DNA from: Amoeboradix gromovi X-113
Lineage: Eukaryota > Fungi > Sanchytriomycota
Reading direction: 5' to 3'
Length of the DNA stretch: 32,000 bases
Assembly (NCBI GenBank): GCA_018985225.1
Contig: JADGIF010000029.1
Coordinates: 1 to 32,000, forward strand
Notes under the pieces: model-generated
What the model was told of the DNA's origin: nothing
Database searches by the model: none
Seen by the model: only the letters and a program-made list of their open reading frames with translations
Position numbers and translations under genes: made by a program
Shown: positions 13,164 through 27,518 of the stretch, piece after piece
Layout of the letters: every line of letters begins with the position of its first letter
Position numbering within the stretch: position 1 is the stretch's first letter

Positions 13164-14693
13164 CTATATGAGTTGATAAATTACAAAATTGCACTCTTTC
13201 ACTTGGTTCGGAGTTCTAGCTCTAAAAAGCCACTTTGTTTGAATTTCAATGTTTTTGAGAAATTCAACCTCGACGTTGGGTAAGTTATCCTTCTTCAGAG
13301 TCTTAACCTTGAAACTCGAATCACTGAATTTAAACCCAATATAATACTTTTCATCAGAATAAAAGTTGAAGGAAGAATCTGGAACAATTTTCATTGCCTC
13401 GATAAATTTGTTTCCTTCTTTTCTGAATAAGTAGGCAAAATCGGACAATTCGTTATTGGATGATAGCATATAGCTGCTCTTTCCATTTTCTCTTTTCAGT
13501 TGGTAAAAGTCGCTCACCCAATATTTCCAACCTTTGACGCAAATCTCATCTTTTTTTGAATCTGGAACATGCAGGTTTATTTCTTGCTTAACACCGTACA
13601 TTCCTATTCCGGTGTTCTTTTCCAAATTTGGGGGAATATCCGACTCTGGAATAAGATTTAAAATAAGATCTAAAATGTGGATCACTTTGGCATCGTAAGG
13701 CAAAAGAGATCCGGAGATAGTTGACGAAGAACTCGAACTATCGAAATTAGAGCTGGTGTGACCGATGTCAAACCCAACTGAAGTTTTGAAGAATATGGCA
13801 TCTGCTCCAACATCGGCTTTTAAAGCCCAGTCTCTCGCATTTGCTTTACTTGAAACATCAATTGAGCTGGAACCTGTGCTTATCCTGCCTAGGTAACCCT
13901 CAACAAGGACAAATTCTCCGTATTTCTTTATAAAGTCTTGCAACTTTTTAGTAGAGATTATGCCGTTAATCATTATTTTTTCTTTCAATTCAATGTAAAG
14001 TTGGCCGAAAGTGACTAATCTTCTATTCTGGGATCCAGAAACTGTCAAAGATTTGGATCTCTCGGCATTGTATATTGCAACTTTTGATGTAGAATAACCT
14101 ACTAGGAAATTAAACGATAATCTGTCAGAACTGCCTTTCGAGATAAGAGAACCAAAAGATGAAATTAAAGACGATTCATTTTCATCTTGAAAATCTTCGT
14201 ATATGCGATTAAAATCGAATTCCATGATATTTGCAAATGATGGGCCGGGTGTCAAAAACGCGTAGTCAGATGACAATTTATAGCAATAAAGATGCCTTAT
14301 TTTTCTGAGTTCCAAATGACCTCTAATGATTCGTGCCCATTCTTCAACATTTGAAACTATGCGGACAGGGGATAACCTAAATTTAAACTGGATTGAGTTG
14401 ACTACACCAAAGGATCTAACAATTTCAATTTCCAAATCATTGTCTAACAGAAACAATATACTGTCATTCCTATACAAGTAGTGCTTTTCACATTGATGGA
14501 GTACCGTCAATAATACCTCTGGGTTCAAACTCATTAGATTACTCTGTATCATATCCTTAACAAGGACGAAATTCTTTGCATTGCAATAAACGAGAGTCAC
14601 CAAAAGACCGTTAACAAACTCTTGAGATATCGCAGGATCATCGGGTTTATTACTATGTTCAATCAGCTCGGAAAAGCTAAAGTAGGGGCCCAT
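13164..14693 (-). CDS. Protein with a putative MACPF/perforin-like domain
   Basis: 509-aa ORF. FIKKYGEFVLVEGYLG resembles the MACPF (Y/W)G(T/S)H(F/Y)x6GG signature. It is followed by a Ser/Gly-rich amphipathic stretch (ALKADVGADAIFFKTSVGFDIGHTSS) like TMH2. No signal peptide. Confidence 0.5.
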   Translation of the reverse strand: MGPYFSFSELIEHSNKPDDPAISQEFVNGLLVTLVYCNAKNFVLVKDMIQSNLMSLNPEVLLTVLHQCEKHYLYRNDSILFLLDNDLEIEIVRSFGVVNSIQFKFRLSPVRIVSNVEEWARIIRGHLELRKIRHLYCYKLSSDYAFLTPGPSFANIMEFDFNRIYEDFQDENESSLISSFGSLISKGSSDRLSFNFLVGYSTSKVAIYNAERSKSLTVSGSQNRRLVTFGQLYIELKEKIMINGIISTKKLQDFIKKYGEFVLVEGYLGRISTGSSSIDVSSKANARDWALKADVGADAIFFKTSVGFDIGHTSSNFDSSSSSSTISGSLLPYDAKVIHILDLILNLIPESDIPPNLEKNTGIGMYGVKQEINLHVPDSKKDEICVKGWKYWVSDFYQLKRENGKSSYMLSSNNELSDFAYLFRKEGNKFIEAMKIVPDSSFNFYSDEKYYIGFKFSDSSFKVKTLKKDNLPNVEVEFLKNIEIQTKWLFRARTPNQVKECNFVIYQLI

Positions 14694-14709
14694 TAGTTTT
14701 ACTCCCTAA

Positions 14710-15363
14710 ATGTCAAATTATTCTGAAGAATTTTTAAAAGTCATGGAAAGCTGCTACATCTCATTGAGCAAAGATGAGTATAAACAAATTCGTGCTAAAA
14801 ATACTGCAGCTGCAGATTTCCGAAAAATTCTGAGCGAAAAGAATGACTATTATAAAAAGAAGACTGTCAGAGAATTACAAGAATGTCGCGACAAGGTGGA
14901 CGCATTCGGTTATGAACTCACGAAAGAAGATCACGAAAATCTGTTTTGTGTTCTTACAAGTGCTCACCTTCTCGCTTTAATTAGGGAAAGACCTTTGGAG
15001 GAACAATTTCCAAAAAATGTAAAAGACGTCCAAAAGCTGCAAGGCATCGCTGAAGTGCTAAAAGAGAAGGATCCAAACATCCGAGCTAGTAATAAAGATA
15101 TTCTCATGGGTAACAAGACATTTAGAGTCAATGAAATATTGGACAACCCAGAAAGAATATACGCACAATTTGACAAATCTGATAAAATTTATGATGCTGA
15201 TTTTGCTATTTTAAGAGAAATTGTAGCAAACCCAGAGTTAATAGACAAAGCACAGGAGTCGAAAAGTCATGGCTACAGGTCCTTTCAAAATAAGTTTGGT
15301 ACAAATTTTCCAGTTGATAAAGTCCAAAAGCTGCGTACTGAACATCCGAGCCTATTTAAATAA
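14710..15363 (+). CDS. Hypothetical charged helical protein
   Basis: 217-aa ATG-TAA ORF with an internal repeat FP..(D/K)VQKL (GTCCAAAAGCTGC at 15028-15040 and 15322-15334). Confidence 0.6.
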   Translation: MSNYSEEFLKVMESCYISLSKDEYKQIRAKNTAAADFRKILSEKNDYYKKKTVRELQECRDKVDAFGYELTKEDHENLFCVLTSAHLLALIRERPLEEQFPKNVKDVQKLQGIAEVLKEKDPNIRASNKDILMGNKTFRVNEILDNPERIYAQFDKSDKIYDADFAILREIVANPELIDKAQESKSHGYRSFQNKFGTNFPVDKVQKLRTEHPSLFK

Positions 15364-15417
15364 ACTGCGGGTTGTCTTCAAGTTGGTGCTATGAGGAGCA
15401 GTTGAGAGATCATTAAT

Positions 15418-15430
15418 GGGACACCAAATG
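15418..15430 (+). repeat. Truncated stub of the Sola-like TIR
   Basis: GGGACACCAAATG is identical to the first 13 bp of the TIR at 20102 and is immediately replaced by a different repeat. Confidence 0.55.
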
Positions 15431-15463
15431 GGACCTGATCTGACAAAATGTCCCTAACTCCAA
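15431..15463 (+). repeat. Direct repeat copy 1 (probable Merlin terminal sequence)
   Basis: GACCTGATCTGACAAAATGTCCCTAACTCCAA recurs at 17301-17331 with 1 mismatch and 1 indel. Confidence 0.8.
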
Positions 15464-15622
15464 TTTTAATAAATTTCTATTTATTGCGAAATCAAGTAGC
15501 TTAAATCGTAAACTATCACCTGTTCAAAGTAGAATTTTATTATACCAACACCTCTTGAAGTTATACCATTTCTCCGTCTGATAAACTCGTAACTCAAGTC
15601 TTATTCTAAGATAGTCCCTAAC

Positions 15623-17248
15623 TTGGTTCAGCCAATCAAAAAAAAATATTTTTATAGGACAAAGCATGAGATAACTGTTAGCTATGACGGAATTGAATCG
15701 TCTCTATCTTTTGATGAAGGAAAAATGGCTGGACATTTACGTACAAAGCTAGCAGAACTTACTAAAGAAAAACTAGAATTAATTGAAATTTATTATGGCG
15801 GAATTAAGATGATTGGAGGAGAATTATTGGTAGCAAATGCTATTTATGAATATAGATATTCAACAGATCAAAAAGAGTCCTTTAAAACTACGACTAAACA
15901 AGCGAAAGATATTTTAAGTCGTTCAAAACAAAAAGAAATTCCTGAGTTGATTAAGACATTTTCTTCGCAATCTGTCGACATAAATGATGAAGCATTGACC
16001 AGTGCATCCGATGAGCTTCAAATGCAATCTGCCATCATTGATTTTCTTAAAAACCTTTGCGAAGAGAAATGTTTGCTATCATTTCACGATACTTCTGCAA
16101 AACCAATTATTGGATCAAATCGAAAGCCTGATGTCACTTGTGTGTCTAAATCGATTACTGGGCATCCTTCTTTGAGTATGGTTGTTACAGTGATTGAATT
16201 AAAATTTGAATGGGATAAATCTTCGAGTAAGAAGTATAAAGAAGCAGTTCAGCAGGCATATACATTTGCAGAGGAAGTTTTCAAATGTCAACCAAGTCGT
16301 AGCATGTTTTATGCCATTGTAACAGATATTAAGGAGACACAAATATGGAAATACTTTAATGGTAAGTCAAAATTAGAATGCCAATGTAGCCAACTTCTTG
16401 ATTGGACAAGCGCTAAACCAGTAATTAAACACTTACTAACACAATCACTAATGGAATTGGGTTTTACTAAATGTTTGACCTCTTCCATAGGTAACATTTC
16501 AGATATTGAGAGTATCAAGGCCAAATATTCTAACAGTAGTGCTCGGGTATTCCGATGTAGATATAAAGACTCTGAACAAATTGTTCTTAAATGCCGTTTT
16601 AGTTCAATGTTGATTGACTATGAGCGAAAAGTGATGAATGAGCTTATTCATGATAACATTGCTAAATCCTCGGAAGTATTTAAAGGCATCATTGATTTTG
16701 TACATTATCACTATATTCAAATTCGTCCATGTGGTCAAGTATTTGATAGAGAACATAAAGCTATAGCAAATGATGTTTACACAAAACTGAAAGGAGCACT
16801 TGAATTTGCTCATAAGAGTGGATATTGCCACAGAGATGTTAAACCAATGAATATCGTTATTCATACTGATAACACACCTATATTGATTGACTGGGAACTG
16901 GCAGTCGAGTCTGATACAGATGTTGAATTTGAACTATCATTTACGTGGGCATTTGCATCAGACGAGTATTTGAAACTTATATTTCAAACTGAAAAAGCCA
17001 ATTTTAAAAAAGAATATGATTTTGATTCTTTATTGTATTCAATAATATATGTTAAAATAGATCTCTGGCCAACAATTCGATTGGAAAGTATTGAATCCGT
17101 GAAGAATTTTATTCAAAAACGACAGAAAATAGTGGACAACATATTAAATCGAGAACCAGAATTTCGAGAATTAGTCAATCCTCGAATCAATAACGACTTG
17201 GATATTGTGCCAAAAATGGATGGATTGAAAATCTTGGACACCAAATAA
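15623..17248 (+). CDS. Crinkler/RHS-type (FunK1-like) effector: Ubl-like N-terminus + PD-(D/E)xK nuclease-like domain + protein kinase
   Basis: RKPDV..IELK..AVQQ..QPSR..AIVTD is the REase-like module. CHRDVKPMNI and LIDWELA are kinase motifs. The start is uncertain: TTG at 15623, first in-frame ATG at 15725. Confidence 0.8.
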   Translation: MVQPIKKKYFYRTKHEITVSYDGIESSLSFDEGKMAGHLRTKLAELTKEKLELIEIYYGGIKMIGGELLVANAIYEYRYSTDQKESFKTTTKQAKDILSRSKQKEIPELIKTFSSQSVDINDEALTSASDELQMQSAIIDFLKNLCEEKCLLSFHDTSAKPIIGSNRKPDVTCVSKSITGHPSLSMVVTVIELKFEWDKSSSKKYKEAVQQAYTFAEEVFKCQPSRSMFYAIVTDIKETQIWKYFNGKSKLECQCSQLLDWTSAKPVIKHLLTQSLMELGFTKCLTSSIGNISDIESIKAKYSNSSARVFRCRYKDSEQIVLKCRFSSMLIDYERKVMNELIHDNIAKSSEVFKGIIDFVHYHYIQIRPCGQVFDREHKAIANDVYTKLKGALEFAHKSGYCHRDVKPMNIVIHTDNTPILIDWELAVESDTDVEFELSFTWAFASDEYLKLIFQTEKANFKKEYDFDSLLYSIIYVKIDLWPTIRLESIESVKNFIQKRQKIVDNILNREPEFRELVNPRINNDLDIVPKMDGLKILDTK

Positions 17249-17300
17249 ATTGAATGCAGTAATTCGTTTTTTAATTTAACTATGTAAAATTGATATTTAA

Positions 17301-17331
17301 GACCTAATCTGACAAAATGTCCTAACTCCAA
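17301..17331 (+). repeat. Direct repeat copy 2, just upstream of the Merlin transposase remnant
   Basis: GACCTAATCTGACAAAATGTCCTAACTCCAA, near-identical to 15432-15463. Confidence 0.8.
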
Positions 17332-17374
17332 ATGGATATACTATAGTAAAGCAACAAGAGGGCAAAGGAGAAAG

Positions 17375-17707
17375 ATGAATCGAGATTTACCATGGGTGAA
17401 CGTGAATGAAGACGACTACATTCAATATTGCTTTGACAATAATTTACTTTACAAAGAGTTGCAGTGTTCAATTTGCCAATCATCTATGAATTTGAAGATC
17501 AATCAAAAAGCATTTCGTTGTATAAATTCTTGTTGTAGCAAAAAATCATTATAAGATACGATAACTTCTTTTCGATGTCCAAATTGAAGTTCAGCCACAT
17601 TCTTTTGGTCTCATACTATTAGGTCCACTCTGTACCAACAAATTCTGTGATCTCTATGACAGGGCATTCGCCCAGCACAGTAGTTTCATTTTTTCAAATA
17701 TACAAGG
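17375..17707 (+). pseudogene. Merlin/IS1595 (ISXO2-like) transposase, N-terminal fragment
   Basis: MNRD..YCFDNNLLYKELQCSICQSSM..AFRCINSCC (Zn ribbon), frameshift, then IRYDNFFSMSKLKFSHILLVSYY*..SMTGHSPSTVVSFF (HTH). Truncated before the DDE domain. Confidence 0.75.
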
Positions 17708-17876
17708 TGTTATGATCTCCACAGAGTTGTTGAGCTATCAGTAGTCATACGGGAGCTGTTGTGACTCCCTGTAAAGTCATAGGATTGTACAACCCCTGAG
17801 TCATGTCATCATGGACTTGGGAGTCCAACAAGGGATTCCTCCTAGGTCACAAGTGAGCATCGTGATCCCTGGATGT

Positions 17877-17885
17877 TATAAATAG
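17877..17885 (+). promoter_or_regulatory. TATA-box-like element upstream of the transposase-homeodomain ORF
   Basis: TATAAATAG about 25-35 bp before the ATG at 17911. Confidence 0.35.
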
Positions 17886-17910
17886 AGTGTTTATCTTTAG
17901 TAAATAACTT

Positions 17911-19971
17911 ATGACTTCCAACGCTACTTCACCTCGAAATAGAGATTCTACAAGAGAATCTACAAGAGATCCCAGTGAGAATCCAAACATGACGCACCAT
18001 CTACTATCAACTCAAAATCCATTTAATACACAGGAAAGCTATTTCGTATCTCCTAACGTAGAAACGTTTGATGATATGACATCGTCTAGTAATCATTCAG
18101 AATCTGATGAGGAACAAATAGACATTGTGGAAAATTGGGTAAATGAATCTACTCACCTTGAATGTTGTCAGAAGAGATGTTTACGAGGGAAAGATAATGA
18201 ACTAACACACTTTAGAATCAACTATTTAAGTTGGACAAGTGAACAAAGAAAATCATGCACGAAAACAATTGTCTACTGCTCTAGAAGAAAGAATCAAAGT
18301 AATCCAACTACTGGACGTGAAGTCCTTCAATACACTTTCTATCCTTTTCAGGAGGTATGTGTTAATGCCATTACAAGATTATTTAGTATTAATCATAAGA
18401 CAGTGAAGAGATGGCTACATAACTTTAAACATGATGGCCTACAATTGAAATCACATGGTAATACACGTAGAGAACCTTCTCATGCATTGTCAAGTATATT
18501 GAAGGAAGATATAGCTGAGTGGCTTACAGCCTTTGCAAATCGAGAAGGTGAACAACGACCAGGTCAGTGGAGAAATAATGGTCAATTGGTAAGAGATACA
18601 AGTACCTACACAGTCATTCCATCTCACTATATGATTCAAGCAATCTACAACCTGTATCTTTCAGATAATCAAGTTAGTGTAAGCTACTCAACCTTTAAAC
18701 GACTCTTTGACCTACAGCCTGTTAAAATCCAAACACCCAAGTCTGATATCTGTGATGAATGTACACAACTCAAATTGAAAATCACTCAATGTGTAGATGA
18801 AATGACATTGACAGAGTTAAATCAAGTACTCTCAACTCATTTGAAAGAAGCAAGATACACTAGAGAAGAGTATCATGTAGACTCAAGACAAGAAGAAGTT
18901 ACACACCTTTCATTTGATTATGCTCAGAATCTATGGTTACCTCATCTTGCTAATCAACCTGCTTCCTTTTACTTCATGTCATTGTTAAATGTATGTGTTT
19001 TTGGAATATTAGATGAAAAAAAGAATGTTCAGATGAATTATATTTACAATGAAGGTCAAGGTAAGAAAGGAAGTAACAATGTCATGTCAATGTTAATTCA
19101 TTATTATTATAAATTAAGACCTGAGAAACGAAGACAAATTGTTTGTCACTGTGACAACTGTACAGGTCAGAATAAAAATAATTGTACCGTCAAGATGTTA
19201 TGTTGGCTAGTTCTTCAAGGACATTCAGAGGATATTCAATTGAAGTTTATGGTACGTGGACATACAAAGTTTGGTCCTGATTCTCATTTTGGTGTGATCA
19301 AGAAAGCTTTTCAATTAAGAGATTGTTATACCCTTGATCATGTTTGTAATACAATCAATGACTCCTCAGAGGAAATGAATCAATGTTATATTTTTCCAAG
19401 TAGAAAGTTTAAAGATTATAGAAGTTCTTTGGATCGTATCTTCAATGACGTGAAGAGCATTACAAGTTATCAATGTTTCTGGTTCAACAAGGATTGGAAA
19501 GGAAAAGTCAAGGTAAGAAAATCTGTGAATGATGAATTTGAGATGATTGATTTACTTAAGATATCATTAGCCTCTTACACTTTTTATCCTCAACAGCTGG
19601 AAGTTCCTGGACTTAAGATGATTAAGAAGGAAGGATTGTATACAAAAGTACGTCCATTTATTCCTGAAGCATTTAAAGATATTTTATGTCCTAGACCTAC
19701 TGTTGTTCAAAATGAAGATGAAGTTGAGTTAGAAGTAACTGAAAGAGTGGAAGATGAAAGCAATACTGTTGTAGATGTAGGTGTAGATCCAAATGTAAAT
19801 CTTAAGAAACGTAGAATAACTAATGCGGATGAAATTCGAAAGCTGACAAGTGTGTTCAGTATAAATCCAAATCCAGATAAACAAGTATTGGAAACTCTAG
19901 CAGTTGATCTTGGATGGGACATTCAACGTGTTAGTTTTTGGTTTGGAAACAAGAGAAAGAGAACAAAATGA
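17911..19971 (+). CDS. Sola1-like DDD transposase with a C-terminal homeodomain (intact, 686 aa)
   Basis: HGN, D-I-C-D-E-C...H Zn motif, and catalytic-type motifs SFDYAQN, HCDNCTGQNKNN and FMVRGHTKFGPDSHFG. An acidic linker leads to a homeodomain ending WFGNKRKRTK. Confidence 0.88.
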   Translation: MTSNATSPRNRDSTRESTRDPSENPNMTHHLLSTQNPFNTQESYFVSPNVETFDDMTSSSNHSESDEEQIDIVENWVNESTHLECCQKRCLRGKDNELTHFRINYLSWTSEQRKSCTKTIVYCSRRKNQSNPTTGREVLQYTFYPFQEVCVNAITRLFSINHKTVKRWLHNFKHDGLQLKSHGNTRREPSHALSSILKEDIAEWLTAFANREGEQRPGQWRNNGQLVRDTSTYTVIPSHYMIQAIYNLYLSDNQVSVSYSTFKRLFDLQPVKIQTPKSDICDECTQLKLKITQCVDEMTLTELNQVLSTHLKEARYTREEYHVDSRQEEVTHLSFDYAQNLWLPHLANQPASFYFMSLLNVCVFGILDEKKNVQMNYIYNEGQGKKGSNNVMSMLIHYYYKLRPEKRRQIVCHCDNCTGQNKNNCTVKMLCWLVLQGHSEDIQLKFMVRGHTKFGPDSHFGVIKKAFQLRDCYTLDHVCNTINDSSEEMNQCYIFPSRKFKDYRSSLDRIFNDVKSITSYQCFWFNKDWKGKVKVRKSVNDEFEMIDLLKISLASYTFYPQQLEVPGLKMIKKEGLYTKVRPFIPEAFKDILCPRPTVVQNEDEVELEVTERVEDESNTVVDVGVDPNVNLKKRRITNADEIRKLTSVFSINPNPDKQVLETLAVDLGWDIQRVSFWFGNKRKRTK

Positions 19972-20422
19972 GTAAATGACTTTTGTAGTTGGACATTTAA
20001 CTTTTTTAAATAGATTTAACAATTATTTATACTATATCAGAGTTTTAAAGCAAATTGAAACTATTGTTTGGTAAAAACTAGGTTGTGGAAAGTTTTCATT
20101 TGGGACACCAAATGTAAAAACTAGACTAAGCCGAAAATTTCCGTTTTGAGATATTTCAATTTGAAATTTGTATTGTAATTCAAATATAAAAACCAGACTA
20201 AATAATTTTCAACCAATTAAGTAATTTTTCAGAAATTTCTACAAATAGCTAACGTTATAATTCTTTGATCCAATTAAGATAAACAAAATTATTACTATTA
20301 TTAAATAATATCTTAATTAAACAATGGGTATGTAAATTGATTTAAGAGTCTTTCATGGTGTTACTTTGATTGGGTAAGAGTTAATTTTTTAAAGGGTTTA
20401 AAACATTGGAAATGAAAAATCA

Positions 20423-22177
20423 ATGAAAGTTGAAAATTCTTCTGAGAATACTTTTGAAGATATGATGAAGCAGATTACAAGTTCATCTGCATGGAAATAT
20501 TTAAAGGGGGTCGAGTTTAAAGATATCCAGTTCAGGGATCTTTCCTATAAATTCCCTTTGATGAATTGGGAGAATAAACTAAAAGAAAAAGAATGGAATG
20601 AATTAAAGCCGTTGTTGGAGATGAAATATGCTTGGCTATCATTGGTTGACAACAAGAAAATCATCAAAAACAACTTTCGTTCTGAGATTACCGAATTCCC
20701 TGTCAATATAACCAAGCAAATAGTTGCAGTATTTACAAATATCATGCATATTCACAAAGTGGATCCGATCAACAAGTGCGTATATCTAACAGAATTACGA
20801 TATTGCAAAGATCAAGGTTTTATTTTGAAAAAGAATAAAATTGAATGTATCAATTCACTTGAATGTGATTGTAGTGAATTTAGCACCACAAGACGTGCTA
20901 TTAATGGTGTTAAAAGATTCAAGAATAATAGCTTTTGTAGGCATGTGTTTTTTATAAGCCATTTTTGTTTGGGTAAACCACAACATGAGTTTACTATGGA
21001 CACATGTTTTGATTTACAGGTCCCATATGCAAATAATTTATTTCAAGTAGAAGGTCATAGTGTTATGCAAAGAAAAGATGTAATTGATACACCTGATAAA
21101 TTTGAGATTTGTGGTAGTTGTTTTAATAGTGTCATAAAAGATCACGAGTATTCAGGTGATATATGCTTTAGATGTAATTCCCATCCTATTCGTATTCTAA
21201 ATCATTATATTTCTAAATTAGAATTCAACAAATTTCCTCGTGATCTAGTAGAGTCTTGTCAATTTAATGATAATAAATGGAAGAAATGGTTAAAAATGCA
21301 TGATGATATTGAGCAGTATTTATATGGTGGTAATTTGGTCTTGTCTTTCCTGGATGAGATGTTATCCAGTGACTCAACATGGTCCGATGTATTTAATTTA
21401 TTCAAGGGTTATTCAAAGTTATATGAATGTTGTGTACTATTTCATGGTACAACAGATAATTTAAAAAAGGATGTATTGTTGGCTTATAAATCTATCCGAT
21501 GTGCATTTACTTCAACTGATGTTATATCCAACTTAAAAGTGTTTGACGATAGTTTAGCTTTGCAGTTTAAAAATAATTGTCTGCTATCTTTTACTCAATC
21601 AAATGTGTCTGGGGATGATAATAAGATATTTATTTCATGGAATAAGAATCAACAAGAATTACAACTTGATACATTAACAAATGAAAATGAAATATTAATG
21701 CATCATGGCACAAGTAGAGGTTATTGTTTAACTTGGATTGAAGCTTGTACATGGGATTTAAAATCCTTATTCTGAAGGCCAAGATTTTAATACTACGAAT
21801 CAATCAGCATTTTACTTGCAAACAGATTTTGATTCTGCCAAGATGAGGGCTGACGCTGCTGTAAAGTTTAAAGGGAAAATGACATGTGTAATGGTATATG
21901 CAGCTAAAGTATCATATAATATGTCTAAGAATTACACAAAGTTGAAAGGAAAGGATTGGAAAGATGCGGTCATAGGCTTTCGAAACGACAAGAACCCAAA
22001 GAATTAGGATATAAGCATTGTATTGAAGGACCTATGGTTACCAATTCAAAAGGTGTTGGCAAAGGGGAGATTCCAAATGGAGGAGGTAGGGGTGATAATG
22101 TTCAAATATGTATTAAAAACCAGAACTTTTTCAAGGATAATTTTCGCTTTCTAGGGCTTGCATTATATGGGGCTTAA
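20423..22177 (+). pseudogene. Cargo gene: SWIM zinc finger + Cys-rich region + frameshifted ADP-ribosyltransferase-like (DUF3990-like) domain
   Basis: CDC..FCRH (SWIM), then CGSC..CFRC. HHGTS is followed, across three frames, by GQDF..AFYLQTDFDSAK..VMVY..WKDAV..R..IEGPM..QICIK. Confidence 0.65.
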
Positions 22178-22213
22178 ATTATATGAATAAATCTATTTAC
22201 TTGCTATATTCAC

Positions 22214-23310
22214 TCATTCACCATAAATAGCATGAAATTCCTCAGGGATATATCTGAGTGCACGACCAATGTCTCGTTTCTTCCTCTCAGACAATGCCGT
22301 TGGAATTAATGATTCAGGTGTAAATAAATAGTCATTTTGACTCAAGTCCTCTTCAATAATAGTATCAAATTCCACAAACATCGGATCGTTGACTTGTTTC
22401 TTACAAAAAACAACACCTGGGTGTTCAGCCTTGAATAAAAAGACGTGATATTTTGCAATGCTTGAAACATCATTGAATACAAGATCTAATTTAGATCGAT
22501 AATCTTTGAATATATGACTTGGAAATATCTTGCATTCATTGGTGACTGAAGACGATTCTATAATTGATTTCACTTGATCCAAATGAAATACATTTTCTCT
22601 TGCATATTTCTTTTTAATGTGACCAAATCCACTATCAGGACTAAATTTAGTATGTCCTTTTATCATAAATTTAAATTCAATCGTATTGCATTTTCCAAGT
22701 AAACACATCCATGACATCAATTTAATAATGGTGTTGTTTTTATTTTGACCAACACAATTATCTGCATGCAATATCAAGTTCACTCGTTGTTCTTTTGGGA
22801 GGCAATAGGCATAATCTAGTAGTAACGTGGCCACATTATTATTTGCCTTTCTGCCTTGGTCTTCTCTGTAAATGTGATTCACTTGTTTGTGATGGGTTTC
22901 ATTGCGTATTCCAAATAAATTAACGTTTAATAAAGAAAGAAAGTACAAGTCACTTGGTTGATCGTGTAATTGTGGTCAACTTAAATTTTGGCTGTAATCA
23001 AATGACAAGTGTGTAAATCCTTGTCTACTGTGATCGCGGTTGTAATCGAGTCTTGCTAATTTGGCTTGTCGTAAATGTAATTGAAAGGCCGTGGTCAATT
23101 CCAAAGTAGCACTTTCTGATAAATCTATTGTATTAAGTTGTTCGCGAAAGACAGTTCAAGTGTCGCAGACATCCGTTTTTCCTGATTTTATTTTAATATT
23201 GCCACATAATTTAAAATACTTGCGAAATGTTTCTATATTGATATTCAATGTAGTGGTGTCACAGATGTACATACCATGTCGACAATTCATCAAACATTGA
23301 TGTTAATGGT
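22214..23310 (-). pseudogene. Sola1-like transposase pseudogene
   Basis: HADNCVGQNKNN and FMIKGHTKFSPDSGFG are in the 244-aa ORF. Upstream KTDVCDT* and THLSFDYSQNLS*PQLHDQP carry stops and frameshifts. Colinear with 17911-19971 but lacks the homeodomain. Confidence 0.9.
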
Positions 23311-24680
23311 CTGTTGAATATATCTTGTGATATTAGAGGTGATAATAATGATGAAAAACGACAACATTTATATGAATGGTTCAATAGAAATTTTCCACCA
23401 GCAATTATCAATGGATTAAGGGTCATGTTACTTGTAAATTTTAATTATGCTCGATTTGGGAGGTTGATCCTTGGATTTATTTCATCACATGCTAATGCTG
23501 GAAATCACCGATATATTAGTACAACATTTAGACTATACGGTTAGTCTAATATTCATACTTGAATAAATATTATAAATAAAATCATTGGTTCATTTATTTA
23601 GTCTATTTTTCATATTCGAATCAAGATTTAAAAGTCATTTCATTGGTCAAATGTATTTAGTCTAGTTATTACATTTGATTAACACGATTATCTTTAAAGT
23701 GACGTAACTAAGTGAATAATGGCTACATTGACTCGAAATTATGATTTTTGAAAAGATCATGTTCTAGAGATTCTGAAAAGTCTATTGTTTAAATTTCTTA
23801 TAATTTCGAGTCAGTCTAGTTTTTATATTTGGTGTCCCATATAGTCTTGGTAAACTTTCAAACTTTGTATAATTGTGCAGTTTCAATTGCGGCATATTTT
23901 CAGACCCCTCGCAGCATGACTTTGCATAAAAAAGCAGAATTATCAGATAGAATTTAATTTGGTAATTCTTTAGAATAAGTACTAGTTTCAGCTTCTATAG
24001 TAAAGTCTTCAAACTGCTAAAAAGTCATCTAGTTTCAGTATTCCTGACGCAATTTAACACTGATAGTAAGCTTGAAACAAATCTTTTGATGTTTTTGAGA
24101 GTCGATGTCAGTGCAAGAAAATATTTACGAGGTACATAGGTCTTGGTAGATGATGTTCTGCATGTGTTTTTACACTTAAGATGACAGCTCTCAATTGCAC
24201 TTGAATAAACTAATTATTATGATTGCACGAAATAAAATGCTCCAACATGGTCTCTTTCCAGAGTTTCCCGCTAGGAAAAACGATACTCAATTTTTTATCG
24301 ATTGCAAAAGGCTCCAAACCGATAACTCAATTATGTCATTTCTAAAGAAATCATTAATTCAGGCAAAACATACTCTTCCACACTAAAAACTCGTACAAAG
24401 GTACAGCTTTCATGACGATTCAAAGAAATAATAAGATTAAGAGAGAAATGAGCCACGGGCTTTGTAATCATGATAGTTTCGCTACTGTTGCTATCACGGC
24501 GATTATATCAAATAAGCGCGTTTCCATTAACACTATGGAGCTCGCATAAAATAATTTTTCCGGTCATGTTTGGTGCCATTTCGGCATACCTGGGTTTAAT
24601 TCAACAGTATTATCTGGGCTCATTGAGTAAATTCATCTGGCACCTTGTGTGTCAGGCAAACGAAAAATTAAATTTGAAAC

Positions 24681-27460: not shown

Positions 27461-27518
27461 TGAAATAATGCTTCAAACTGTTTCAGAAAGTTAGTCCAGT
27501 TTTTATATTTGATGTCCA
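27461..27518. repeat. Solo terminal fragment of the Sola-like element
   Basis: CAGAAAGTTAGTCCAGTTTTTATATTTGATGTCC is identical to 6121-6154. Similarity extends about 25 bp further inward (TGAAATAATG). No adjacent partner end is visible. Confidence 0.8.

What the first reader, a model, noticed from the sequence alone, without database searches (positions are those of the whole stretch)
17911..19971. Intact Sola1-like transposase fused to a homeodomain
Seen: the last 57 or so residues (about 19798-19968) fit homeodomain spacing exactly (R5, L16, F20, P26, L34, A35, L38, G39, V45, W48, F49, N51, R53; G at 50; no TALE insertion). They are joined by an acidic linker to a transposase with all three acidic motifs intact. 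The neighbouring paralog (22214-23310) stops at IPEEFHAIYGE*, where this extension begins. No TIR pair flanks this ORF. Inference: either a homeodomain-targeted transposase or a domesticated chimeric transcription factor. I do not know of this architecture being described.
Basis: partly seen in the sequence, partly recalled or inferred. Interest (0 to 1): 0.8.

Follow-up and report, generated by a model that had tools for sequence, protein, structure and literature searches.

The report
Sola1 transposase carrying a true homeodomain
This gene is the only intact copy of a jumping-gene enzyme (Sola1-type transposase) that ends in a genuine homeodomain. I found no published report of this pairing, and it has been kept across a small old lineage of such elements, so the homeodomain most likely gives the transposase an extra DNA-recognition module.

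Summary
ORF 17911-19971 (686 aa; the real start is probably M27 at 17989) encodes a DUF7869 DDD-type transposase, a disordered acidic linker and a canonical non-TALE homeodomain. The homeodomain scores 43 bits against a Pfam cut-off of 22.9 and forms three helices at pLDDT about 96.

It is a transposon gene, not a single-copy host gene. The genome holds at least 6 further, decayed copies at 72-92% nucleotide identity, and four of them still show the homeodomain. Its left copy lies at 15430, 2.5 kb upstream, and no right copy is in the window. Two complete elements elsewhere have 4-bp ATTT duplications, the Sola1 AWWT hallmark.

The fusion is old but narrow. Of 71 long relatives, 5 carry the homeodomain (this ORF, three proteins at 34-56% identity and one C-terminal fragment). 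On a transposase-only tree the four closest form one clade and the fifth lies beside it.

W versus C1105 gives dN/dS of 0.11 for the core, 1.1 for the linker and 0.34 for the homeodomain.

Unexpectedly, 11 of 15 family termini sit in one AAAT inside the TIR of a rival, homeodomain-less Sola1 MITE family with 1638 termini.

An earlier follow-up in this scan (s1-519876) reached the same fusion from a broken copy elsewhere in this genome. No read or RNA check was possible.

The parts
15418..15429 (.). Outer 12 nt of a split TIR of the rival (B-type) Sola1 family, ending in the AAAT target or duplication
   Evidence: The same 12 nt precede 7 of the 15 family termini in the genome (an eighth has a variant), each with different outer flanks.
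15430..15640 (+). Left end of the homeodomain-Sola1 (M-type) element. The 33-nt TIR is 15430-15462 and the conserved subterminal region runs to about 15640.
   Evidence: The genome has 13 DNA matches. In W, C908, C426 and C384 this left end lies roughly 2.2-2.7 kb upstream of the homeodomain transposase in the same orientation. An inverted partner closes complete elements on C908 and C542.
15623..17248 (+). Passenger or nested ORF (DUF6826 plus protein kinase) between the left end and the transposase
   Evidence: Pfam result. Other copies carry different large ORFs at this place.
17299..17333 (+). Degenerate second copy of the M-type terminus, in direct orientation
   Evidence: It is preceded by ATTT.
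17847..17988 (.). Unrelated short repeat that supplies the upstream in-frame ATG at 17911
   Evidence: About 10 copies occur elsewhere, and one is inserted inside the C908 copy.
17989..19971 (+). Transposase coding sequence from the probable true start (M27) to the stop, 660 aa
   Evidence: Homology to all copies begins at 17990-18013. The N-termini of the relatives agree. The AF2 model has mean pLDDT 86.6.
18358..18636 (+). N-terminal helix-turn-helix region (residues 150-242), present in all relatives
   Evidence: Weak HTH_23/32/28 hits, and helices in the model.
18910..19515 (+). RNase H-like DDD core, comprising the SFDYAQN motif (334-340) and the DUF7869 hit at residues 358-535. Candidate catalytic residues are D336 (18916), D415 (19153) and D457 (19279).
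   Evidence: Pfam 83.6 bits, conserved acidic columns, and Foldseek hits to TnsB, IstA, Mos1 and integrases with probability 0.97-0.99.
19699..19797 (+). Acidic, disordered, fast-evolving linker
   Evidence: pLDDT is below 50 for model residues 584-606. dN/dS is about 1.1, and the length varies between copies.
19798..19968 (+). Homeodomain, positions 1-57, with recognition helix WFGNKRKR
   Evidence: PF00046 43.2 bits, PDB homeodomains only, three helices at pLDDT about 96, and conservation in copies and relatives.
19972..20006 (+). Last bases shared with other copies. The 3' end of this copy is undefined beyond here.
   Evidence: Homology to C908 ends at 20006. Only C1105 continues to 20220. 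No inverted M-type TIR is found anywhere in the window.
20102..23838 (.). Neighbouring B-type Sola1 element with its own TIRs and a decayed homeodomain-less transposase (context, not part of this element)
   Evidence: 39-nt inverted repeat at 87%, TIR scan, and paralog at 43% identity with stops.

Best explanation
The ORF is the transposase of a low-copy Sola1-type cut-and-paste transposon lineage whose enzyme has a canonical homeodomain at its C-terminus. An N-terminal helix-turn-helix region and an RNase H-like DDD core (D336, D415, D457) do what they do in homeodomain-less relatives. A floppy acidic linker tethers the homeodomain as a second, sequence-specific DNA-binding module. That module was acquired once or very few times, long ago, and has been kept by selection in part of the lineage. 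The window copy is the only intact reading frame found in this genome. It still has the family's left TIR 2.5 kb upstream but no recognisable right TIR, so it probably acts, or recently acted, as a source of enzyme rather than as a mobile unit itself. The inferred role of the homeodomain is one of two. Either it recognises the element's own ends, setting them apart from the roughly 1600 ends of the rival family, or it steers integration into that family's TIR. Shown here: the architecture, the copy family, TIRs and TSDs, the conservation and the insertion bias. Inferred: transposition activity and what the homeodomain binds.
For: The domains are supported by Pfam and PDB sequence searches. The AF2 model has pLDDT 86.6, a disordered linker and a confident three-helix homeodomain. 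Foldseek's top hits are DDE transposases and integrases. The own genome gives 68 tblastn matches. The homeodomain subfamily is found on C1105, C908, C426, C811, C575 and C384, mostly with stops or frameshifts. Complete elements C908:13537-21553 and C542:93-4656 have 33-nt TIRs and ATTT duplications. AWWT is described as the Sola1 hallmark, and insect Sola1 TIRs start GGACC (PMC3845634). Sola elements have a DDD transposase, a 4-bp TSD and a size of 2-9 kb (PMC10741241). Homeodomain-bearing relatives P0001, P0002, P0012 and P0045 account, with this ORF, for 5 of 71 relatives. W, C1105, P0001 and P0002 form a clade with 100% support on a tree built without the homeodomain. Relative P0001's contig has the same TIR type 1 kb upstream of its gene. 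P0002 and two near-identical proteins (same 90% cluster) sit on three contigs of one metagenome. dN/dS is 0.11 for the core, 1.1 for the linker and 0.34 for the homeodomain. The W branch has the fewest unique changes and the lowest N/S ratio.
Against: No right TIR is present in this window, and the 3' junction to the neighbouring element is shared with C1105 and unexplained. Copies are 11-28% diverged, so there has been no recent burst. The Sola1 assignment could not be checked against Repbase reference proteins. The homeodomain dN/dS rests on 57 codons. The assembly reportedly comes from whole-genome-amplified single sporangia, which can create chimeric junctions (PMC8371127).
Confidence: 0.8

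Rival explanations
1. Domesticated chimeric transcription factor. The host has kept this one copy as a homeodomain regulator, or as a repressor of the family, and it no longer transposes.
For: It is the only intact ORF among at least 7 copies. No right TIR is present in the window. The W branch has the lowest N/S ratio.
Against: All three catalytic acids and the whole core are kept. The same architecture is multi-copy in another organism's metagenome and carries a TIR there. The left TIR is retained. Purifying selection is also seen on branches leading to copies that are now dead, as expected for a transposon lineage.
Confidence: 0.1
2. The homeodomain is a target-selection module. It tethers the transpososome to the TIR of the rival B-type family, so that integration falls in the AAAT at positions 9-12 of that TIR.
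For: 11 of 15 M-type termini abut a split B-type TIR cut at that AAAT, with different outer flanks. B-type TIRs offer only about 1638 of my estimated 0.45 million AWWT sites. B-type elements, whose enzyme lacks the homeodomain, sit in generic AWWT sites with no shared flank.
Against: This is a correlation in one genome with about 13 elements. The N-terminal DNA-binding region of a paralogous enzyme could recognise the related TIR just as well, as in the end-targeting of bacterial IS30-type elements (my own knowledge). Relative P0001 is not inserted in such a TIR, and three termini lie in generic sites.
Confidence: 0.25
3. The homeodomain recognises the element's own ends and so discriminates M-type from B-type ends.
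For: Helix 3 reads WFGNKR, as in PBC-class homeodomains. The M-type TIR holds TGAT and TGAC half-sites at positions 7-16 that the B-type TIR lacks, and TGACA recurs in the P0001 TIR. The binding preference of PBC and MEIS proteins is from my own knowledge. A C-terminal DNA-binding domain binds the ends in piggyBac (my own knowledge).
Against: Four-base motifs in a 33-nt TIR are expected by chance. Position 50 varies (G, T, N) among relatives. Homeodomain-less relatives manage end recognition without it.
Confidence: 0.35
4. Assembly or annotation artefact: the homeodomain exon was joined to a transposase by misassembly.
For: The genome reportedly derives from amplified single sporangia, and reads could not be checked.
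Against: The same junction is present in three other copies of this genome and in independent assemblies from four other samples.
Confidence: 0.01

Closest known systems
Sola1 DNA transposons (Sola superfamily; Bao et al. 2009, as cited in PMC3845634 and PMC10741241)
   Same: A DDD-type RNase H-like transposase of about 630-660 aa, 4-bp AWWT target duplications, TIRs that begin GGACC or GGGACC, element sizes of 2-9 kb, and abundant MITE derivatives.
   Different: The enzyme carries a canonical homeodomain after the core. The element inserts preferentially inside the TIR of a sister family. It is found in a zoosporic fungus in which no Sola elements have been reported.
piggyBac transposase with its C-terminal cysteine-rich DNA-binding domain
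   Same: A DDE/D core followed by a C-terminal sequence-specific DNA-binding domain (my own knowledge).
   Different: It belongs to a different superfamily, its domain is a zinc-binding fold rather than a homeodomain, and there the C-terminal domain is the main end-binding module.
Chromodomain-bearing integrases and transposases (chromoviruses; Ginger was not examined here)
   Same: An accessory C-terminal module added to a DDE enzyme and thought to bias the choice of target (my own knowledge).
   Different: That module reads chromatin marks rather than DNA sequence.
PBC-class (PBX/Extradenticle) homeodomains
   Same: The recognition helix WFGNKR with G50. The borderline Homeobox_KN score is 25.8 against a cut-off of 24 when the domain is scanned alone.
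   Different: There is no three-residue TALE loop, no PBC domain, and position 50 is not conserved in relatives.
Paired domain and Tc1/mariner 'homeodomain-like' helix-turn-helix regions
   Same: A link between transposases and helix-turn-helix DNA-binding folds (PMC4901127).
   Different: Those are N-terminal paired-like folds that do not match the homeobox profile. Here a true PF00046 homeodomain is present.

Membership tests
Homeodomain (PF00046) | Profile score above the curated cut-off | tested here: met
   43.2 bits for the isolated C-terminus and 38.7 bits in the whole protein, against a cut-off of 22.9.
Homeodomain (PF00046) | Three-helix fold with W48, F49, N51 and R53 in helix 3 | tested here: met
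   Model helices 613-625, 631-641 and 645-659 at pLDDT about 96. The residues were read from the sequence.
Homeodomain (PF00046) | Sequence-specific DNA binding | not testable with these tools
   Needs SELEX, DAP-seq or EMSA.
TALE / PBC homeodomain class | Three extra residues between helices 1 and 2 | tested here: not met
   52 query residues align to 55 residues of PBX1. Homeobox_KN is below its cut-off in the full protein (21.9 against 24).
Sola1 transposons | 4-bp target-site duplication with consensus AWWT | tested here: met
   ATTT on both sides of the complete C908 and C542 elements. 12 of 15 termini are flanked by AWWT. The sister family shows 16 of 29. The hallmark is stated in PMC3845634.
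Sola1 transposons | DDD catalytic triad in an RNase H-like fold | tested here: met
   D336, D415 and D457 are conserved in at least 94% of 71 relatives. The model shows the beta1-3, alpha1, beta4, alpha2, beta5, alpha order. Fold hits are to DDE transposases. Catalysis itself was not tested.
Sola1 transposons | Terminal inverted repeats | tested here: met
   A 33-nt TIR pair on C908 and C542. In the window only the left one is present.
Sola1 transposons | Sequence similarity to reference (Repbase) Sola1 transposases, as opposed to Sola2 or Sola3 | not testable with these tools
   No Repbase or Dfam proteins were on hand. Pfam only names the core DUF7869, and no paper mentions that name.
Domesticated transposase gene | Single copy, no transposon ends, orthologous position in related species | tested here: not met
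   The gene is multi-copy with decayed copies and its left TIR is present. Orthology could not be tested because no related genomes were searchable, and flanking genes of relatives found no match.

The most novel reading that the evidence does not exclude
A eukaryotic cut-and-paste transposase uses a bolted-on homeodomain to choose its integration site. This directs the element into one defined 4-bp site inside the terminal repeat of a competing transposon family. It would be a natural, modular, sequence-guided DDE integrase and a form of transposon-on-transposon parasitism.
Probability: 0.22. Interest if true: 0.85.

Novelty: new variant of a known kind. Interest (0 to 1): 0.6.

Why it matters
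Homeodomains are known as host transcription-factor modules. Here a canonical homeodomain is kept by selection on a mobile-element enzyme, so it can travel with transposons. That bears on how DNA-binding domains and transposases exchange parts in both directions. The modular layout (core, floppy linker, small well-understood DNA reader) makes it a simple natural system for asking whether an added DNA-binding domain redirects a DDE transposase. The observed nesting in one site of a rival family's TIR gives a concrete read-out. The finding also documents Sola1-type elements, about 800 MITE copies, and passenger genes in a fungal phylum whose transposons have not been described.

Tried and rejected
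- **Word-based search with the homeodomain region alone.** It found nothing. That is uninformative, because even known relatives were missed.
- **Right TIR in the window.** None was found with up to 3 mismatches. DNA after the neighbouring element (23839-24680) is unique host sequence, so the element does not resume there.
- **The 'Merlin end' reading.** I rejected this for three reasons: the duplications are 4-bp AWWT, the end lies upstream of the homeodomain transposase in four loci, and the same TIR type lies upstream of relative P0001's gene.
- **TIRs on environmental contigs.** No inverted pair was found because the contigs are too short.
- **Synteny between relatives' flanking genes and this genome.** No matches.
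- **Reference papers.** The Bao 2009 and Yuan & Wessler 2011 papers are not held, so Sola1 features are cited second-hand.
- **Maximum-likelihood tree with a mixture model.** It did not finish in time, and FastTree was used instead.
- **Taxon names for relatives.** None are recorded.
Full report
**1. Observation**

The window has an uninterrupted ORF at 17911-19971 (+) of 686 aa.
- Pfam finds DUF7869 at residues 358-535 (83.6 bits, cut-off 26).
- Pfam also finds a Homeodomain at residues 632-686. It scores 38.7 bits in context and 43.2 bits (E 3.4e-11) when the last 73 residues are scanned alone, against a cut-off of 22.9.
- A sequence search of the PDB with the C-terminus returns only homeodomains, with DUX4 best at 4e-6.
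- The alignment to PBX1 is three residues shorter than PBX1, so the TALE loop is absent.
- The paralog on the other strand (22214-22948) ends in IPEEFHAIYGE, where the extension of this ORF begins. Intact paralogs on C367 (579 aa) and C915 (586 aa) stop at the same place.

One correction is needed. DNA similarity to every other copy begins at 17990-18013. The stretch 17847-17989 is an unrelated short repeat with about ten copies. Two environmental relatives start about 8 residues before the conserved NPFNTQESYF motif. The real start is therefore probably M27 (ATG at 17989), giving 660 aa.

**2. Structure**

An AlphaFold2 model of the 660-aa form, built with a 71-sequence alignment, has mean pLDDT 86.6. 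It shows four parts:
- an N-terminal helical region;
- a strand-helix succession typical of the RNase H fold;
- a disordered stretch at model residues 584-606, which is the acidic linker;
- three confident helices at 613-625, 631-641 and 645-659 (pLDDT about 96), which are the homeodomain.

Foldseek against the PDB places TnsB, IstA, Mos1, Metnase, Hermes and retroviral integrases on top, with probabilities of 0.97-0.99 for the best. Acidic residues conserved in at least 94% of 71 relatives are D336 (in SFDYAQ), D415 (in CDNC) and D457 (in GHTKFGPD). These are a plausible DDD triad on beta1, beta4 and the following helix.

**3.

A six-frame search of the whole assembly (10.5 Mb, 1319 contigs) gives 68 matches. 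One subfamily shares 72-92% nucleotide identity with the window gene:

| Copy | State |
|---|---|
| C1105 | 5'-truncated; last 378 codons open |
| C908 | full length but with stops and a 306-bp insertion |
| C426 | stops; frame lost inside the homeodomain |
| C811 | older; frameshifts and a stop inside the homeodomain |
| C575 | fragment |
| C384 | fragment |

. The window copy is the only intact frame found.

In four loci (W, C908, C426, C384) a conserved block of about 210 bp lies roughly 2.2-2.7 kb upstream of the gene in the same orientation. It starts with a 33-nt terminus beginning GGGACCTGATC. In the window this terminus is at 15430.

On C908 the same 33 nt recur inverted 8 kb downstream (element 13537-21553). 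On C542 they bound a 4.6-kb element without a transposase. Both complete elements are flanked by ATTT on each side. Of the 15 termini in the genome, 12 are preceded by AWWT.

AWWT is reported as the hallmark of Sola1, and insect Sola1 TIRs begin GGACC (PMC3845634). Sola elements are described as having a DDD transposase, a 4-bp TSD and a size of 2-9 kb (PMC10741241). I could not compare the protein with Repbase Sola1 references, so the subgroup rests on these features.

In the window no inverted partner exists within 3 mismatches. A degenerate second terminus in direct orientation sits at 17299. Family similarity ends at 20006, 35 nt after the stop. Only C1105 continues, to 20220, into the left TIR of the neighbouring element. 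The DNA beyond that neighbour (23839-24680) is unique. The 3' end of this copy is thus truncated or rearranged. Because the assembly apparently derives from amplified single sporangia, an artefactual junction cannot be excluded.

**4. A second, homeodomain-less family and a striking nesting pattern**

The neighbouring element (20102-23838) and a MITE at 5646-6155 carry a different TIR that begins GGGACACCAAAT. This TIR occurs 1638 times in the genome, against 0 for the control pattern. Its transposases are 36-46% identical to the window protein and lack the homeodomain. Their insertion flanks are generic AWWT (16 of 29) with no shared context.

By contrast, 11 of the 15 termini of the homeodomain family abut one half of that rival TIR, cut exactly at its AAAT (positions 9-12). 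In both complete elements the two halves reconstitute one TIR plus the duplication. The outer flanks differ between loci, so these are independent events. The window copy shows the same pattern at 15418-15429.

By my estimate, 10.5 Mb at 35% G+C holds about 0.45 million AWWT sites. Rival TIRs therefore make up about 0.4% of the available sites, so the bias is far beyond chance. Three termini lie in ordinary AWWT sites and one is ambiguous.

**5. How old and how wide is the fusion**

- The word-based search found two full-length relatives with both domains: P0001 (647 aa, 55% identity) and P0002 (638 aa, 50%).
- The exhaustive search found 5063 relatives at E up to 0.001.
- Of 71 long ones scanned with Pfam, 69 have DUF7869 and 5 have the homeodomain: this ORF, P0001, P0002, P0012 and the C-terminal fragment P0045.
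- Large Atlas clusters of DUF7869 proteins from molluscs, arthropods and rotifers show no homeodomain.
- All the homeodomains align in register after the same ...CP.P motif. Position 50 varies: G here, T or N elsewhere.
- On a FastTree built after removing the homeodomain, W, C1105, P0001 and P0002 form a clade with 100% support. P0012 sits just outside, next to homeodomain-less proteins and the genome's own rival family, all within one clade of 97% support. This fits one early gain with later losses, or two gains.
- P0001's contig carries the same TIR type about 1 kb upstream of its gene, flanked by ATAT.
- P0002 and two near-identical proteins of the same 90% cluster lie on three contigs of one metagenome. 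The two contigs compared share only the gene plus 76 nt upstream and 25 nt downstream.

**6. Selection**

Between W and C1105 the values are:

| Region | dN/dS |
|---|---|
| core | 0.11 |
| linker | 1.1 |
| homeodomain | 0.34 |

(dS about 0.36 overall). Against the environmental relatives synonymous sites are saturated. Non-synonymous divergence still ranks core (0.24), then homeodomain (0.37-0.42), then linker (0.57-0.63).

Branch-specific counts are small. W has the fewest unique changes and the lowest N/S ratio (6/9). C1105 has 14/13 and C908 has 23/14, against a neutral expectation near 4. This fits a lineage that stayed functional longest. It does not separate 'master copy' from 'domesticated'.

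**7. Interpretation**

The best-supported reading is a Sola1-type transposase with an accessory homeodomain, inherited within an old, narrow lineage. The window gene is the last intact source of the enzyme in this genome.

Homeodomain-less relatives have the same N-terminal helix-turn-helix region, so the homeodomain is an addition rather than the basic end-binding device. Two roles are plausible, and I cannot choose between them:
- **Reading the element's own TIR.** That TIR contains TGAT and TGAC half-sites that are absent from the rival TIR, next to a PBC-like WFGNKR helix. This is a lead from general knowledge and carries weak statistical weight.
- **Steering integration into the rival TIR.** This rests on the bias described in section 4.

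A domesticated regulator is less likely. The catalytic core is fully kept, the left end is kept, and the same architecture behaves as a repeat elsewhere. Misassembly is excluded by the independent copies and assemblies.

**8. Context and literature**

The genome's size and G+C content fit Amoeboradix gromovi (10.5 Mb, 36%; PMC8371127). I did not verify the species.

A survey of fungal DNA transposons found Sola1 only in Rhizophagus and as single cases in Dikarya (PMC5751038). The sanchytrid genome paper does not mention transposons. Phrase searches for a homeodomain-transposase pairing returned nothing. The homeodomain review mentions transposases only for the paired domain. Absence from the searched library is not proof of novelty.

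**9. Limits**

- No reads or RNA could be examined.
- There were no Repbase profiles and no related genomes to test orthology.
- The tree is FastTree only.
- Only 71 of about 5000 relatives were scanned for added domains.

Noticed in passing
window 5646-6155, 20102-23838, 27491-27518; genome-wide: A second Sola1-like family with a TIR beginning GGGACACCAAAT has 1638 termini in 10.5 Mb (control 0). That is roughly 800 mostly MITE-sized copies. Intact homeodomain-less transposases are on C367 and C915.
   Followed up: partly
window 15418-15430; G000 C908, C542, C422, C448, C775, C426, C443, C284: 11 of 15 termini of the homeodomain family are inserted in the same AAAT inside the rival family's TIR, at loci with different outer flanks. 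This is transposon-in-transposon-end nesting far beyond chance.
   Followed up: partly
window 15623-17248; L031:3010-4986(-); L040:1476-3491(-): Copies of the homeodomain element carry different large ORFs between the left end and the transposase. The window copy has a DUF6826-plus-kinase protein, C908 has a 659-aa protein with a ubiquitin-like domain, and C542 has a 672-aa Cas12f/TnpB-like (Fanzor-type) protein. Whether these are passengers or nested insertions is open.
   Followed up: partly
window 17847-17989: A repeat of about 145 bp (about 10 copies, one inside the C908 transposase) sits directly upstream of the true start and provides an in-frame ATG, lengthening the ORF by 26 codons.
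   Followed up: yes
window 17326-17551: A small ORF with a CxxC...CxxxxC pattern lies after the degenerate second terminus. It has no Pfam match and is unique in the genome.
   Followed up: partly
window 18835-20220 versus L035:288-1634: The junction from the transposase 3' end into the left TIR of a rival-family element is shared at 84% identity by two loci (C556 and C1105). The nested arrangement therefore predates their split, and how it spread is unexplained.
   Followed up: partly
L038 and L049 (metagenome ERZ27314334): Two contigs carrying near-identical homeodomain transposases share only the gene plus 76 nt upstream and 25 nt downstream. In the window too, the family similarity ends 35 nt after the stop. 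The conserved unit is little more than the ORF.
   Followed up: no
window 20423-21775: A 450-aa ORF inside the neighbouring element has no Pfam family at E up to 1.
   Followed up: no
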